Below are positions 1 through 29,610 of a DNA stretch of 64,000 nucleotides, piece after piece. Numbering within the stretch: position 1 is the first letter of the stretch; each line of letters starts with the position of its first letter. The position numbers and the translations under genes are program-made. The stretch lies in assembly GCF_044704955.1 (NCBI RefSeq), contig NC_091999.1:16864001-16928000 (forward strand), read 5' to 3'. Below the pieces are notes generated by a model, which was given only the letters and a program-made list of their open reading frames with translations, searched no databases and was not told the origin of the DNA. The stretch is from Pristiophorus japonicus (lineage: Eukaryota).

Positions 1-755
1 TAAAGCTCCCTCTACATTGTCCCATCAAACATGCCCAGAGCAGGTACAGAATGGGTCAGATACAGAGTAAAGCTCCCTCTACATTGTCCCATCAAACACA
101 TAGAAACATAGAAACATAGAAACATAGAAAATAGGTGCAGGAGTAGGCCATTCGGCCCTTCTAGCCTGCACCGCCATTCAATGAGTTCATGGCTGAACAT
201 TCAACTTCAGTACCCCATTCCTGCTTTCTCGCCATACCCCTTGATCCCCGTAGCAGTAAGGACCTCATCTAACTCCTTTTTGAATATATTTAGTGAATTG
301 GCCTCAACAACTTTCTGTGGTAGAGAATTCCACAGGTTCACCACTCTCTGGGTGAAGAAGTTCCTCCGCATCTCGGTCCTAAATGGCTTACCCCTTATCC
401 TTAGACTGTGACCCCTGGTTCTGGACTTCCCCAACATTGGGAACATTCTTCCTGCATCTAACCTGTCTAACCCCGTCAGAATTTTATATGTTTCTATGAG
501 GTCCCCTCTCATTCTTCTGAACTCCAGTGAATACAAGCCCAGTTGATCCAGTCTTTCGCCCACGCCCAGAGCACGTACAGCATGGGGTTAGATACAGAGT
601 AAAGCCCCCTCTACACTGTCCATTCAAACACTCCCAGGGCACGTACAGCATGGGCTAGATACAGAGTACAGCTCCTTCTGCACTGTCCCATCAAACACTC
701 CCAGGGCATGTACAACTGGGTTAGAAACTGATTAAAGCTCCTTCTACTGTCCCCC
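1..755 (+). repeat. 67-bp minisatellite (CCATCAAACACTCCCAGGGCAGGTACAG...), interrupted by a CR1 insertion
   Basis: TAAAGCTCCC recurs at 1 and 68; the units resume after ~560. Confidence 0.9.
99..558 (-). mobile_element. CR1 LINE 3' end (young, 5'-truncated)
   Basis: ORF 207..563 is the CR1 ORF2 C-terminus (LEFRRMRGDLIE...FFTQRVVNLWNSLP); (ATAGAAAC)n tail at 99-130. Confidence 0.92.
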
Positions 756-2734
756 CATGGTGTTTCGGAACTGTTCCTTCTGACTGTCACACTCTGGGTA
801 ACTGATCTCATTTCTGCGGCGACTCATCAACTTTAAAGTCAAACTTTTACGTTTCTCACATATACCAGTTTCTTAAATAACTGAGTTAAATGACACTCCC
901 CGCAATACAGAATCACAATCCAGAAGGTTTACAACCGGTCAGGAGGACTCCTGATTCTCACACAGTGAGCAGGCGCACAGAAACAGAACAGACACAAACG
1001 GTGCTCCAGGCAGAGAGACCAGTTAAATCTGTTAATTTCAATGAAGCTGCTTGATTTCTAATTTATTTCTTGTCAATTTCCAACCACCTCAACTCCGCAG
1101 ATTCTTTGAAATTAAACTGATATTAATTTGAGAGACTCTTCAGAATCCAGCCATTTTTCCATCTCTGTCAACTTTCTTGGAAACCGTGTAAAAATTAACT
1201 CCCCTGAAAGCAAGTATCTGGAAATAATTCACATTCCACGGGAATTTGCTGCCGTCACGGGACTCGGTGACAGAATAAGAATGTCACAATCCAGGAGACA
1301 TCTACATTGAAATCTGACCACCCACTGATTTGATATATTTTCATCAGTAAATATAACCTGTAAAATCATCGAGGCAAAACAGGAAGTTAATTCACCAAAA
1401 TCTGCAGCGGCACCTTATCGAACTCAGCACAGCCGGGTTATAAATGCATTGATTTATAAATTAATTTTGGAATTAATTAAACATTCTCTCCAACCATTGA
1501 GGTTTTGCAATAACTATAATACGGACCAGTATGCAACGCAATTGTAAGGGATCGTTTGTGTTTAATAAATGATCACTGATGTTACATTCTAATTAATGTT
1601 CATGTTAGATGATTATTGAAAATAATCTGAGTGCCTGTCTGGCCCTTCCTCCTCAGAAGCACACTTACCTGGAACATTTGAAATTAACTTAATGTGCCTG
1701 AATTTCAGCCTTACTAATACAGCGAAATTTGTTATTGATAGACAGGTTTTGGTCTTGCAAAGTGTTCAAGATTAGTTTAGTGAAAGTTTTAACAAACAAC
1801 ACCCAATATTTATTAAACATTGTAGAAACGCCAAACGGTTTCACAAATTCTAGGTATTCTGAGTGACACAGGCACAAACTCTCCTCAGCAGATCAACACT
1901 AAATCACATCACTGAGGGGCCGAATCCCTCGACAGAACCTTTCATGGAGCAGACCCTTCACTCTATAAACACTTCCAGCAGAATCAAATGTATCCTTGCA
2001 AAAAATCTCATTACAGAATCACCGAACCCGCCTAACACTGAAATAACTAATGATTGAATTCAACAGAAATTTAAAATACGTTCAGCAGAATTGTGTTTAG
2101 ACTGTTAAATACATTAATGTTGATATTATAGCATATTTAATAATAATTGGTGATATTACTGCATTATAATAATGTTAGTAATATTAATTTAAATCTGTTC
2201 CGGCTGGAAATGTGTTAATTGTTCAGTTCTTAATTACAGTAACGCGTCACATATTGAATCTAAACTTTCGGGAACATTCGCTCAGTAGATGACAATGTAA
2301 TTTTCAATAAAAAGCATTCAATTCCTTAAGATTATTTATTGATCGCTAAGCTTTCTGTTTTGTGCCTGCAATGTTCCTTTAAATAGATTTAAACACAATG
2401 TTTGCATTCGATCAGAAAAACTGCAACAATCATAGGTCACCGAGATTAAACATTGCAGAAACGTCAAAGAGTGTAACAACCATAAAGTATTTAAAGTAAC
2501 CAGGCACACAGTCGTCAGCGAATAAACACCAAATCACATCAACAACATTTTCTGTGGAGAAACTGTTGATTTCTATAATCTTTTTGAAGCAGAATCACAT
2601 TGAGCATTGCAAAAAATCTCAAAACAAAATCCACCGGACCCAAGTTTCAGTGAACGAAATAATTATTAAAATGAACAGAAATATAAAATAAAGACACAAA
2701 TACAACAGTTTTTGAATGAGTGAATGTTCCTTAC

Positions 2735-2782
2735 CTGCAGTCACCGTCACCATGGTCCCTTGTCCCCAGTAGCCCGTAGCGT
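2735..2782 (-). CDS. IGHJ: JH segment, probably a D-J fusion (xATGYWGQGTMVTVTA)
   Basis: WGQGT-MVTVT motif; phase-1 donor G|GTAAG at 2734-2730. The 5' end ACGCTACGGG lacks the usual YFDY-type J start. Confidence 0.92.
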
Positions 2783-2810
2783 CACAGTGAGATATGTCAT
2801 GTCAAATACT
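2783..2810 (+). other. Recombination signal sequence, 12-bp spacer, 5' of the (D)J segment
   Basis: Perfect heptamer CACAGTG 2783-2789, 12-nt spacer, nonamer TCAAATACT 2802-2810 (6/9 match). No nonamer-like sequence at a 22- or 23-nt spacing. Confidence 0.75.
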
Positions 2811-3123
2811 CCGGTGGACTGTAAACTATAAAATACAGAGATTAAATTGCACTCAGCTCTAAAAACATGATTCCGACACCCCTAAGAGTGAATCAGTGAG
2901 ATATTTCAGTTTGTACCGTTCATTATATTTATAACAATGATTGGAATACTTCTGAAGCCTCTGTGCAGATTCAGCATGGCAATCACCATTAATAAAGCAG
3001 ACAAATGTAATACATTTAAATATATATATATATCTTACTTCCACTCATTATTTTTATTTAAGCTTCAGTTCCTTCGACGCTCCTGGTGTGGTAGCGATCA
3101 CAGTTTTGAGCAAACTCCCTTGG

Positions 3124-3161
3124 GGTTTTTGTATGGAGAGCTCGGTCTGGATAGCACCGTG
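3124..3161 (-). other. Recombination signal sequence, 23-class (22-bp spacer), 3' of the VD
   Basis: Heptamer CACGGTG (3161-3155), 22-nt spacer, perfect nonamer ACAAAAACC (3132-3124). Confidence 0.93.
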
Positions 3162-3177
3162 ATCCATTGCTGTAGTC
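3162..3177 (-). CDS. IGHD: D-derived segment fused in the germline to VH (GACTACAGCAATGGAT; DYSNG)
   Basis: 16 nt lie between the CAR codons and the next heptamer, and there is no RSS directly after the V. An unjoined VH normally ends only a few nt past CAR. Confidence 0.8.
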
Positions 3178-3479
3178 CCTTGCACAGAAATAGATGGCGT
3201 TGTCTTCGCTCCTCAGATTCTTCATGTCCAACGTGAAGATGTTGTTTGAAGTGTCTTTGGACGCAGTAAATTGGCTCTCAATCCCTGAGGCATAATACTT
3301 GCTCGATGGACTGTAATAGGTAACCAGCCACTCCAGCCCCTGTCTGGGAACCTGGCGGATCCAGTACATGTAGCTACCACCAAGATCGAAGCCGCTGGAT
3401 TGACAGGTCAGTCTCAGGGAGCCTCCGGGAATCCTGGTCTCTGCCTCGGGCTGAATCAACACCACATCCGAGTGGACAC
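3178..3479 (-). CDS. IGHV: IgM-type VH exon, open frame: (R)[25 protein letters not shown]...[13 protein letters not shown]...YFCAR
   Basis: Acceptor TTTTTACAG ends at 3480. Both domain cysteines, the WIRQ/GLEWL motifs and D-x-A-x-Y-F-C-A-R are present, with no stop codons. The framework resembles elasmobranch IgM VH. Confidence 0.95.
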
Positions 3480-3606
3480 CTGTAAAAATAATCAAAAACC
3501 CCAGAGGATCAATCCTGGTGAAATGATTCCTGACGCTGTAACATTCCAGAGAGAAACTAATACTGAGACAGTAACAGTGAGAGATTGCACAATAAAAACT
3601 ACTCAC

Positions 3607-3652
3607 GGGAAAAGAAAGCCAGCAACAGACTGAGAGAAATCGCCAACCTCAT
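3607..3652 (-). CDS. IGHV: IgH variable gene leader exon ([15 protein letters not shown] + 1 nt)
   Basis: ATG at 3652-3650; hydrophobic signal peptide; phase-1 donor GTGAGT at 3606-3601; 127-bp intron to the V exon. Confidence 0.93.
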
Positions 3653-3744
3653 CCTCCTGGCAATGTGTGGTGAATGGTTCCGGCAAGAACTCACTGAGCA
3701 AACACACTCCCAGACTGTTATATTGCAGTCCCAGTGACCGGCAG

Positions 3745-3841
3745 TTAAATACCCGGGAGATGGGGGCGAGGTCACTGGCGCCGCCCATTGATGCCCAGAT
3801 AGGGGCGGTTTCTGTATCCACATCACTCCTTCCGCATCACC
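3745..3841 (-). promoter_or_regulatory. VH promoter: TATA-like box, CRE/TCR-Vbeta-like decamers and GC boxes, no octamer
   Basis: TATTTAA 3751-3745; AGTGACCTCG 3776-3767 and AGTGATGTGG 3827-3818 (each 8/10 to AGTGAYRTCA); GC boxes near 3781 and 3802; no ATGCAAAT. Confidence 0.65.
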
Positions 3842-5368
3842 AACAGAATGGACTCACATCTGGACTGTAAATTAAATCCCTTTATTTACTCACTGTTTCA
3901 CAGGGGTTGTGAATCTCTGAGATTGAATTATATTATCAGGGTCCAAAGACACTGCCAGTTTGTGTTTCTCGATCTCCCGCTAACTATCCATGCATCTGTA
4001 CCAATAAAGTATCCCCTATAATCTGAATTGTTATCACTCTATTTAACCGAGTGCGAGAGATGGGTAATGTGATTCGATTTACGGTGTACGTGGCTAAAGC
4101 TACACTTTTGGTCTGGAGATGAGATCTTGCTCCTCACATTACGCAATTGTCTCTCATTGCATTTCACTAACTGCCCCTGAGTCTGTGACCCTAAGACAGC
4201 TGTTTGTAAAATTAGCTTTAAAATAAGTCCGCTTGACTGATGATAAAGGAGTGAGTTGACGGAGACACATAATAATATGGGGCCCGTCCGCTTCAGACCT
4301 GCGTTTTATGAGAGAAGCTTGTGAATCAGAACCGATAATGTGATCAGCAAACCTCGACATCCAAATCCTTGCAGCTAACTTTAATAGCGACCGACTGTGT
4401 AACAGACACGGGTAACAGGAATTCGGTGTATCAGGACATAACGGTATGTTACAGAATATCACAGGAATAAATGCTTCATCTCCAGCAGAAACAAATCACA
4501 ATCTGGGCATTGCACCACCCAATGGTAACCGGGCTATGAGAGGGGGTGTTCAGGGATCCAAATCAGCGCAAATTACACCGCACACTGCGCGGCTACCAAT
4601 CAGGAATAATAGAGACATTAGTTTAGACCAGGCGCAAAATTCTGTGAGAATATTAAAGAAGTGCAGCTGGCACTTCTCTGTGAGAATATTCAAGGCAATT
4701 CAACCTGTTTTATTTACTTTGCGAATCCCACTCATCTCATTACAGTGTGGGGTGAGGCCATTAAACCTCTCTCCAGCACTTCATACTGTACTGAATAAAG
4801 TGACTGAATGGTCTAGAATGGTCTTTATTTGGAAATAGTTTTCCTTAGATACCGTGTGGATCAATTCATTATTTCCGATCTTATCTTATTATATGGCGAG
4901 AATGGAATTTATGGAAAATCATTCTTGAGATGTTATACCATGTAAAATGCTTCTTATTTTAAAAGTTCGACTGAATAATTTAATGTTCAAATAGTTAAAT
5001 ACCATCTTTCTCCCATTCTTGTTCACGCTAATCTGACCCACACAATATTTGGCAGTAACCTAACTGACTACCGTCAGCGAGCCTCGAACACCAGTGTCAT
5101 TTACAGGAAGCATGTGGGTTTCTGTGCAGTCCATCAAAGGACAGTTTTCTCACTACTGACCGCATGCCGGGAAGCCAACTTCAAAACCTTCACATTGTCA
5201 AAATACTTATTTATATACACATCTACCCAGTAACAGTACTGGAGTTAAGTTTAATTTTTTCGTTGTGTAAATGTTCCCATATCCCAGGAAAGGAAATATA
5301 TCCAATGTCTCAGAAACCATGTCAATAGCAGCAGTCAGCTGGAGTATCAGTACCGCACATAACCCTGC

Positions 5369-27390: not shown

Positions 27391-29610
27391 CAATACCCTA
27401 TAAGACCTGAAGCTAGAACAGCGGTTGTAGAAATAGTAAAAGGGCTAGTGGAAAAGGGTATCTGTAAAGAAAGAGTTAGCACCACTAACTCCCCAAAAAG
27501 GCCCAGGTAGGGAAATCCCAGGTCCTGTACCTAGGGTACTGCCTCTCAAGGGGTTGAAAGAAACGCCCACGGATAGGAAAAAGGCTGTCAAGGACATGCC
27601 TAGACCAGTAACGGTAAGGGGGGTGAGGAAGGTACTGGGCCTCTTTAATTACAGCCGGAACTTTATCCCTGATAAAAGGAGACCTATAGCCTATTACTCT
27701 ACCACCGAAAGCCCGGTGGTGACTGGGTTATCCAGATGTATAGCCGCGCTAGATTGCGCAGCTTGGGCGGTAAAAATTAAGCGAGCTTGTGGTGATGACT
27801 GGAAACATCATTCTCCACACTAAACACACATTGGTAGAAATGTTAAACACAGGAAAACTGAGAACCGTATCTAATATGAGACATGCAAAGTGGGAAGCAG
27901 TCCTCTTAACACCCAACAAAGCGGTAACCATAATTAGTGATGTAGGAAACAACCCCACAGAAGGTATGATGGGTGAGGGGGAACCCCACTTTTGCGAAGA
28001 GGTATGTGAGGATATGGAAGAGGATAGAATAAAAGACGCCCCCCTTCAAACCGCAGAACAAACCTTGTTTGTGGACGGCTCACGAAAATACGTAGAGGGA
28101 CTACCTCGTACCGGATGGGCCGTAGTTAACCAGGATCTAGAGACAGTTGAATCAGGGCGAATTAATGGGGGGTCGTCAGTTCAAGTGGCAGAACTGGTAG
28201 CCCTCACCTGGGCACTGGAATTATCGGAAAATATGATTGTTAATATTTATACGGACAGTAGATATGCATTCGGGGTAGTACATGATTATATGACAGCATG
28301 GGGGAGAAGGGATGTTTGCGATGGATAAAGACATAACTTACGAAATACCAGTTGATATCAGCTGTGAAAAAGATATTGGTTTCATTGAAAAAAAAATAAT
28401 TTGAAGAGGTAAAAAACACTCTCCATTTATAATGATTTTAAATGATTAAAATTAAGTCAGTGCCGCTGGGGCCCAAGACGAAGAGATAAGTATTGAGAAA
28501 CTACACCAGGACACTTCTGAGGAGGAAATAGGTATGTGGACAAAGCAGGGCGCAACGCAAGGGAAGGATAACGTTTGGAGACGAAACGACAAGGTAATGG
28601 CGCCTGAAAGCATACTGAATACCTTATTGGAGTTGCATCATGGCTTGTCTTATTCAGGATGAGAGGCCATGACCGGGAGTCTTGGAAGAGATTGGTGGTG
28701 GAAAGAGATGGGGAGAGATATCACCAAACATTGCCATCGATGCGTTACGTGCGCACAATATAATCCAGGCAGGCCCATTAAAATTAAAATGGGACACTAG
28801 CCCCGTCCACGTGGGCCATGGGAACACGTACAAATTGATTTCACAGGTCCTTTGCCCCCATCCCATGGAAAAAGATATTGCCTAGTGATTATAGATCAAT
28901 TTACCCGGTGGGTAGAAGCTTTCCCACACGTGATTGCACTGCCTCAACAGTGGTAAGTATATTGACCGCGCAGGTGATTCCCCGATGGGCAGTGCCTCTT
29001 CAAATAGATTCCGACCAAGGCACCCACTTCACCGGAAAAATTGTAAAAACAATATGCCAGCTGATCGGCATAAAACAAAAATTCCACATCCCCTACCACC
29101 CGCAGAGTTCTGGTATGGTAGAGCGCATGAACCATACCCTTAAGAACGCCCTGGCAAAGGCCATGCAAACGTCAGGAAAAACGTGGACAGAAGTATTACT
29201 CATTATATTGATGAAGTTAAGAGCCACGACAAACCGGACAACCGGATTAACCCCTTGTGAACTAATGACAGGAAGGGCGATGCAATTACCCGAGAACATC
29301 ATAACAGGGTGGGCCGATGTAGGCCCATTAAAAGACAAAATAAAACGGTATGTTTTGGAACTAAGTACTCAATTAAAAGGGATGCATAAATTAGTTCGGT
29401 ACAATCAGGAAGAAAGAGACTCGGAAGCAGAGCCTACAAAACTCCCTGAAGTCCCGTAGGCAGGAAGTCGCATTATGGTAAGGGTCCTCCCGGGAAAAAC
29501 CGGGGTTTGCCTCAAAAATGGATATGACCATATGAGGTTATACTCAGTGGGGACACTTGTGCCTGCATCGATGTTAAAGGGAACGGACAATGGAAGCATC
29601 GGACCCAGCT
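27391..29610 (+). pseudogene. pol: ERV pol remnant (RT ends, RNase H, integrase), with frameshifts and deletions
   Basis: QYPIRPEA...NSP; KKAQ...VLYLG; LGLFNYSRNFIP; RPIAYYS; RNase H LFVDGS / AELVAL / IYTDSRYAF; integrase CHRCVTC, QIDFTG, SDQGTHF, YHPQSSGMVERMN. Confidence 0.92.

What the first reader, a model, noticed from the sequence alone, without database searches (positions are those of the whole stretch)
2735..3652. Germline half-joined VD-DJ IgM cluster that needs only one RAG step
Seen: the VH runs into 16 nt of D-like sequence and then a 22-spacer RSS. The J is preceded by a 12-spacer RSS and ~10 atypical nt. No free D segment is visible in the 379 bp between the coding ends. Established: unjoined elasmobranch IgM clusters are V-23 / 12-D1-23 / 12-D2-12 / 23-J, and germline-joined genes (VD-J, VDJ, and VD-DJ in skate) are known. 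Inference: two RAG joins (V-D1 and D2-J) were fixed in the germline, leaving a convergent 12/23-compatible pair. With intact leader, splice sites and frame, this could be a working gene whose diversity is limited to a single junction.
Basis: partly seen in the sequence, partly recalled or inferred. Interest (0 to 1): 0.88.

Follow-up and report, generated by a model that had tools for sequence, protein, structure and literature searches.

The report
Partly pre-joined shark IgM gene
This is a shark- or ray-type antibody heavy-chain gene whose V-D and D-J pieces are already fused in inherited DNA, so one cut-and-join step would complete it. Reviews already list this arrangement, and this genome holds many such genes, so it is a further example, not a new kind.

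Summary
On the minus strand lie an intact split leader, a VH exon running 14-17 nt past the usual CAR(D) end, a CACGGTG-22-ACAAAAACC RSS, 379 bp with no D segment, a 12-spacer RSS and a 48-nt J with a splice donor.

The 17-nt V tail resembles D-like elements seen in two paralogs in public runs (joint chance about 1e-4). The first 10 nt of J contain the exact 7-nt core of that D family (chance about 0.002-0.006). Both junctions therefore look D-derived, which supports VD-DJ.

Contigs from a DNA sample with small allelic differences cross the 12-RSS/J boundary and the interval at single-copy depth. That argues for germline rather than somatic origin. A second sample, which behaves as RNA, holds an unrearranged transcript across RSS/J.

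The J-side junction is shared with at least one paralog. Scan notes, which I did not check, list at least seven more VD-DJ clusters and several V-DJ clusters in this genome. The joins are therefore probably old and spread by cluster duplication.

Function is not shown. The Cmu exons lie outside the window, and no rearranged transcript of this copy was seen.

This is a new member of a known kind, and the scan found it before on other DNA of this genome.

The parts
3607..3652 (-). Leader exon (ATG at 3652; [15 protein letters not shown] + 1 nt)
   Evidence: Sequence read. The leader resembles those of Heterodontus and other shark VH. The splice 3476->3604 (cut +3) is seen in an X5 contig.
3480..3606 (-). 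Leader intron, 127 nt, GT..AG
   Evidence: An X5 contig skips exactly 127 nt.
3179..3479 (-). VH proper (FR1 to Cys-Ala-Arg), open frame, with the conserved Cys, Trp and YFC
   Evidence: Pfam V-set E=8e-16. 68% identical to Heterodontus francisci Ig heavy chain V region HV01. The best PDB matches are all antibody VH domains.
3162..3178 (-). D-like 17-mer GGACTACAGCAATGGAT fused to V (encodes D-Y-S-N-G)
   Evidence: Homologous VHs end at CAR(D). It matches the 17 nt a paralog carries between a heptamer and J at 10/17, and the D part of a paralog VDJ transcript at 11/17. Joint chance is about 1e-4.
3124..3161 (-). 22-spacer RSS: CACGGTG / 22 nt / ACAAAAACC
   Evidence: 1 match in the window, 0.02 expected by chance.
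2811..3123 (-). Interval with no D segment. It holds (TA)n at 3020-3035 and two partial copies of the J-side RSS/coding boundary (2894-2908, 3091-3104).
   Evidence: X1/X3 contigs cover 2746-2934 and 2905-3120 at single-copy depth.
2783..2810 (-). 12-spacer RSS: AGTATTTGA / 12 nt / CACTGTG
   Evidence: perfect heptamer, nonamer 6/9, flush with the J coding end.
2773..2782 (-). First 10 nt of the J-side coding block (ACGCTACGGG), probably D2-derived
   Evidence: It contains CTACGGG, the exact majority core of the three D-like elements. Chance is 0.0016-0.0056. A paralog transcript reads GACTAC before TGGGG and departs from the window exactly upstream of CTAC.
2735..2772 (-). J proper (CTAC TGG GGA CAA GGG ... 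ACT GCA G), followed by the GT donor at 2734-2733
   Evidence: An X5 contig shows J spliced at 2736 to Cmu1-like letters, but it cannot be assigned to a copy.

Best explanation
This is a germline, partly pre-joined IgM-type heavy-chain minilocus of a cartilaginous fish, in the VD-DJ state.

- The VH exon carries a fused D element and that D's 3' 22-spacer RSS.
- 379 bp downstream, the J carries about 10 nt of a second D and that D's 5' 12-spacer RSS.
- The two RSSs converge and obey the 12/23 rule. One RAG-mediated deletion would therefore make the complete V region, with diversity at a single junction. A flush join is in frame and gives [14 protein letters not shown].
- The joins are probably old germline RAG events spread by duplication of clusters. 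The J-side junction is shared with a paralog, and many clusters of this genome are noted with the same or complementary states.

Shown: the anatomy, the D-likeness of both junctions, presence at single-copy depth in DNA of a sample with small allelic differences, and transcription of the unrearranged RSS/J.

Inferred: RAG origin of the joins, that the gene rearranges and is used, and that intact Cmu exons follow.
For: - Anatomy and RSS statistics.
- No D in the interval.
- VH identity.
- V tail: it aligns 10/17 with the 17 nt that a paralog DNA contig carries between heptamer CACTGTG and the same J start. It aligns 11/17 with the D part of a paralog VDJ transcript. Joint chance is about 1e-4.
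- J start: it contains the exact 7-nt core of that D family.
- Spacing: the interval of 379 bp fits one inter-segment distance of about 400 bp. Cmu1 is expected 6.3-6.8 kb from J, which is outside the window (PMC2435157).
- DNA: X1/X3 contigs 2746-2934 and 2905-3120 have depth 46-52, like the single-copy flanks. They differ from the window at 2853, 3272 and by a GTC indel at 3120, so they come from an allele other than the assembled one.
- RNA: X5 contig 2743-2847 is an unrearranged transcript across the 12-RSS/J boundary.
- Literature: reviews list VD-J and VD-DJ germline clusters (PMC5192425; PMC4279169).
Against: - No unjoined cluster of the same genome could be aligned, so the D1/D2 identities rest on two short paralog fragments and on post hoc statistics.
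- The J is 48 nt, an ordinary J length. A follow-up note on another cluster reads the 12-RSS as sitting on a full-length J (s1-876492, unchecked).
- The VD junction itself (3155-3180) lies in sequence shared by about 3-7 copies. The listed contigs do not tie it to this copy independently of the assembly.
- No rearranged transcript of this copy was seen in the one small RNA-like run.
- The Cmu exons were not seen.
Confidence: 0.75

Rival explanations
1. VD-J on a rewired family baseline. In this species the ordinary cluster is V-23 / 12-D-22 / 12-J, with a full-length J that carries its own 12-RSS. Only one join (V to the single D) separates this cluster from its unjoined relatives. The J-side is not a DJ fusion.
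For: Scan notes s1-876492 (followed up) and s1-877846 describe such clusters in this genome. The J is 48 nt, an ordinary length. The J start is shared with a paralog.
Against: The J start holds the exact D-family core CTACGGG. It departs from the GACTAC-TGGGG seen in a paralog transcript exactly where a trimmed J would begin. Putting a 12-RSS flush on an untrimmed J needs an unusual event, such as complete loss of D2 or a hybrid joint.
Confidence: 0.15
2. No join at all. This is a D-less heavy-chain cluster in which this V family simply has a long 3' end and J naturally has a 12-RSS.
For: The RSS and its flank (about 3100-3135) are present in about 7 copies, similar to the V copy number. Scan note s1-877411 reads another cluster as D-less.
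Against: A paralog transcript with 97.7% identical V leaves the window at TGTGCAAGG. It carries 6 other letters before its own D-like 17-mer, so the D is a separate element there. The same element is fused to J in another paralog. Shark VHs end at CAR(D).
Confidence: 0.05
3. Somatic intermediate or assembly artefact. A lymphocyte VD-DJ intermediate of the kind known in nurse shark, or a chimera of paralogs, entered the assembly.
For: VD-DJ occurs as a somatic 2R intermediate in nurse shark (PMC2435157). V, J and their flanks are multi-copy.
Against: The interval and the 12-RSS/J boundary are at full single-copy depth (46-52) in DNA of a sample with small allelic differences. Overlapping contigs run from J to the 22-RSS nonamer. 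There are no N-like additions. Many similar clusters are noted in this genome.
Confidence: 0.03

Closest known systems
Partly germline-joined IgM clusters of cartilaginous fishes (VD-J, VD-DJ), as listed in reviews (PMC5192425; PMC4279169; primary work Kokubu et al. 1988 on Heterodontus, cited in PMC2193156, not readable here)
   Same: Cluster-type IgH. V and D are fused in inherited DNA and an RSS is retained. One or two RAG steps are saved. A RAG origin in germ cells has been proposed.
   Different: Here both junctions can be tied to one D family, and the J-side junction is shared with a paralog. The genome appears to hold many copies in complementary states (VD-DJ, V-D(D)J); that rests on unchecked notes.
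Somatic VD-DJ '2R' intermediates of nurse shark IgM loci (PMC2435157)
   Same: The same product: VD with the D1 3' RSS facing DJ with the D2 5' RSS, separated by about 400 bp of D-D intergenic DNA.
   Different: Those arise in single lymphocytes or thymocytes. This one is at single-copy depth in bulk DNA and present in more than one allele.
Fully germline-joined VDJ genes (nurse shark IgM1gj; ratfish joined IgM V)
   Same: Pre-made CDR3 sequence, and a possible early-life or innate-like role.
   Different: Those need no RAG step and have no RSS. This one still needs one join and keeps one diversifiable junction.
Light-chain V-J clusters, and the partly germline-joined VH of the opossum (Wang and Miller 2012, cited in PMC8355894)
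   Same: One-step recombination between a 22/23-RSS and a 12-RSS. The opossum case is a VD-joined VH that still recombines.
   Different: Different loci and lineages. In this case both partners carry D-derived ends.

Membership tests
Elasmobranch cluster-type IgM heavy-chain gene | Split leader plus a VH-type V-set exon with the conserved Cys/Trp/YxC | tested here: met
   68% identical to Heterodontus HV01.
Elasmobranch cluster-type IgM heavy-chain gene | J segment within about 1-1.5 kb of V, with the WGQG motif and a splice donor | tested here: met
   J at 2782-2735, 379 bp from the V coding end, followed by a GT donor.
Elasmobranch cluster-type IgM heavy-chain gene | Its own Cmu exons a few kb downstream of J | not testable with these tools
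   Only 2.7 kb follow J in the window, and Cmu1 is expected at about 6.5 kb (PMC2435157). An X5 contig splices a J of this family to letters reading TPPPPTLYA. That looks like a Cmu1 start from memory, and the contig cannot be assigned to this copy.
Germline partly joined VD-DJ cluster | V coding end extended by D-derived letters and followed by a 22/23-spacer RSS | tested here: met
   The 17-mer matches D-like elements of two paralogs with joint chance about 1e-4.
Germline partly joined VD-DJ cluster | J preceded by D-derived letters and a 12-spacer RSS in place of the 23-spacer RSS of free JH | tested here: inconclusive
   The 12-RSS is clear. The D-core CTACGGG lies in the first 10 nt. No free J of this genome was available for comparison.
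Germline partly joined VD-DJ cluster | No free D between the two coding ends | tested here: met
Germline partly joined VD-DJ cluster | The configuration is present in germline or non-lymphoid DNA | tested here: inconclusive
   It is at single-copy depth in DNA contigs of a sample carrying a different allele. The tissue is not known, and the listed contigs do not bridge the VD junction.
Germline partly joined VD-DJ cluster | Flanks match the D1 3' and D2 5' flanks of unjoined clusters of the same genome | not testable with these tools

The most novel reading that the evidence does not exclude
In this species most of the IgM heavy-chain family has been converted to one-step, light-chain-like recombination. 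An old D2-J fusion put a 12-RSS on J across the family. Later germline joins then produced complementary VD-DJ and V-DDJ clusters that were amplified by duplication. Heavy-chain CDR3 diversity would then be made largely at one junction with pre-encoded D-derived ends, possibly as a semi-invariant early-life repertoire.
Probability: 0.25. Interest if true: 0.55.

Novelty: new member of a known kind. Interest (0 to 1): 0.3.

Why it matters
Germline-joined antibody genes are the main evidence that RAG has acted in germ cells and reshaped antigen-receptor loci. A genome with many clusters in complementary half-joined states would allow three things: counting independent germline RAG events on a tree, dating them, and testing whether one-junction heavy chains are used, for instance early in life. 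This single cluster adds one well-described example and no new principle.

Tried and rejected
- Kokubu et al. 1988 is not held, and only the abstract of Hinds-Frey 1993 is held. Published D and J sequences could therefore not be compared.
- A look-up of scan findings by sequence came back blank, which means nothing.
- Paper searches for 12-RSS on shark J found nothing.
- A search for a hidden D or a further RSS in the interval found none.
- A search for other V or Ig-type domains in the window found none. The large ORFs elsewhere are retroelement remnants or have no Pfam match.
- The X5 VDJ contig was considered as a product of this gene and rejected. It has 7 differences in V. Its 36 letters between V and J do not contain this gene's tail or J start. 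As laid it is out of frame.
Only the V exon was searched, by reference. The in-frame CDR3 of a flush join was read from the two frames.
- The species could not be named because run labels are coded.

Full report
**Observation.** The gene lies on the minus strand.
- The leader exon runs 3652-3607. A 127-nt GT..AG intron occupies 3606-3480.
- The V exon runs 3479-3162 and is open throughout. It is a V-set domain (Pfam E=8e-16).
- Its closest database protein is the Heterodontus francisci Ig heavy chain V region HV01 at 68% identity. Catshark and whale shark VHs follow.
- All best matches among solved structures are antibody VH domains.
- Aligned shark VHs end at CAR or CARD. This exon continues to TGTGCAAGG-GACTACAGCAATGGAT.
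- The V-side RSS follows directly: CACGGTG, a 22-nt spacer and a perfect nonamer ACAAAAACC (3161-3124). It is the only such site in 64 kb, with 0.02 expected by chance.
- The J coding block is 2782-2735 (ATGYWGQGTMVTVTA, then GT). A perfect heptamer CACTGTG, a 12-nt spacer and a 6/9 nonamer precede it (2789-2802-2810).
- A dedicated scan for a D framed by two RSSs, or for any further RSS in the interval, found nothing credible.
- The window holds no other V or Ig-type domain.

**Is the V tail a D?** The rest of the genome could not be read directly, but laying public runs on 2000-5000 gave two paralog fragments.
- One DNA contig matches the window's J up to 2783. In gene orientation it then reads heptamer CACTGTG, 16 further letters and the J start. 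That paralog therefore carries 17 extra coding letters, GGACCACGGGAATAAGG, between a heptamer and the same J start.
- They align flush with the last 17 letters of the V exon here, GGACTACAGCAATGGAT, at 10 of 17. Most mismatches are transitions.
- A spliced contig of run X5 has a V that differs at 7 of 299 places, so it comes from a paralog. It leaves the window at TGTGCAAGG and carries 36 letters before CTACTGGGG. At offset 6 these hold CGACTGCGGGAGTGGGT, which matches at 11 of 17.
- The joint chance of both matches is about 1e-4 by shuffling, and 7e-5 for random window 17-mers.
- The same element is thus fused to V here, fused to J in one paralog, and separated from V by six other letters in another. 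That is how a D segment behaves, so I take the V-D join as real. These are post hoc tests on short strings.

**Is the J a DJ?**
- Free JH segments carry a 23-spacer RSS in the standard layout (PMC2435157). Here the spacer is 12.
- The paralog transcript reads ...GGACTACTGGGG, the usual D-Y-W-G. The window reads ...GGGCTACTGGGG and departs exactly upstream of CTAC.
- The ten letters before that, ACGCTACGGG, contain CTACGGG. This is the exact majority core of the three D-like elements. The chance is 0.0056 by shuffling and 0.0016 for window 10-mers.
- This supports a D2-J fusion.
- The DNA paralog above carries the same J start behind its own D-like 17-mer. It therefore looks like a D-D-J, and the D2-J junction predates the split of these two clusters.

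**Germline or somatic?**
- X1 and X3 are one sample and behave as DNA. They give contigs 2746-2934 and 2905-3120 at depth 46-52. Single-copy flanks have the same depth (2114-2325 at 53, 4013-4187 at 55).
- The two contigs overlap. Together they run from J across the 12-RSS and the whole interval to the 22-RSS nonamer.
- At 2853 and 3272 every contig differs from the window. The interval contig carries a GTC insertion after 3120.
- The sample therefore holds another allele, or a near-identical copy, of the same arrangement.
- A somatic intermediate of the nurse shark kind (PMC2435157) would not reach full depth.
- V, its promoter, J and the J-C intron are present in about 4-12 copies at 90% likeness. 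The listed contigs therefore do not tie the VD junction to this copy. For that junction I rely on the assembly.

**Expression.**
- X5 comes from another sample and study. It behaves as RNA: the leader intron is spliced out, and a J of this family is spliced at 2736 to letters reading TPPPPTLYA. From memory that looks like the start of shark Cmu1.
- One X5 contig (2743-2847, one difference) crosses the 12-RSS/J boundary in sequence that is single-copy in DNA. The unrearranged locus is therefore transcribed.
- No transcript with this gene's VD tail was found. The run is small, so this says little.

**Mechanism.**
- The 22- and 12-spacer RSSs converge. One RAG deletion of the 379 bp would join VD to DJ.
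- A flush join is in frame and gives [14 protein letters not shown], a 12-residue CDR3, as read from the two frames.
- Diversity would come from trimming and additions at one junction, and later from hypermutation.
- The interval length fits one inter-segment distance of about 400 bp. Cmu1 is expected 6.3-6.8 kb beyond J, outside this window (PMC2435157). Completeness of the cluster is therefore unknown.

**Context in this genome.** Scan notes, which are unchecked leads, list the following in this genome:
- at least seven other VD-DJ clusters;
- several V-D(D)J clusters;
- one-D clusters read as V-23 / 12-D-22 / 12-J.

One follow-up (s1-874495) reached the same verdict as mine on another cluster. 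One note on another piece spans 921 letters against 918 here. That would fit the GTC indel, so it may be the other allele or a twin copy. These notes changed my reading. The 12-RSS on J is a family trait, and the joins were probably inherited by duplication and did not happen in this cluster. The paralog that shares the J start is my only independent evidence for this.

**What is known.**
- Reviews state that shark and skate IgM clusters can be partly (VD-J, VD-DJ) or fully (VDJ) joined in the germline (PMC5192425; PMC4279169; PMC8355894).
- RAG activity in germ cells is the proposed cause (PMC2193156).
- The finding is therefore a new member of a known kind.
- The more interesting possibility is a heavy-chain family largely converted to one-step recombination. 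That needs the whole-genome comparison named under next steps.

**Limits.**
- The primary Heterodontus paper is not held.
- Read laying allows a single call.

Noticed in passing
window 2894-2908 and 3091-3104 (minus strand): Two partial copies of the J-side RSS/coding boundary lie inside the interval. TGAAATATCTCACTG matches the spacer plus heptamer at 14/15 (3 of 2000 shuffles reach it). ACTGTGATCGCTAC matches the heptamer plus J start with one extra T (35 of 2000). They may be relics of older 12-RSS or D2-like elements. Unexplained.
   Followed up: partly
window 3272: The window has T (gene strand CAA, Gln). Every DNA and RNA contig of X1, X3 and X5 has C (CGA, Arg), the conserved FR3 Arg of the RFT motif. 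This is either an allele of the assembled haplotype or a consensus error.
   Followed up: partly
window 2853 and 3120/3121: The copy-specific contigs of X1/X3 carry T>C at 2853 and a GTC insertion after 3120, just beyond the 22-RSS nonamer. Scan note s1-877839, on another piece, spans 921 letters against 918 here. It may be the other allele or a twin copy.
   Followed up: no
window 2000-5000, depth table: V, the promoter region, J and the J-C intron are present in about 4-12 copies at 90% likeness. Only 2808-3009 of the interval is single-copy. Close paralogs therefore lack this stretch or have diverged in it.
   Followed up: partly
window 27789-29456 (+) and 207-563 (-): Retroelement remnants: RNase H and integrase ORFs of an LTR element (Pfam), and a CR1-like LINE tail ORF downstream of J.
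   Followed up: partly
window 1996-2078 vs 2607-2690: An 84-bp stretch of the J-C intron is repeated at 77% identity about 600 bp further downstream.
   Followed up: no
window 3653-3900 (minus strand, upstream of the ATG): By eye there is no ATGCAAAT/ATTTGCAT octamer in the 250 bp upstream of the leader, only TATA-like AATATAA and GTATTTAA. Paralogs share this region (loose end at 3741).
   Followed up: no
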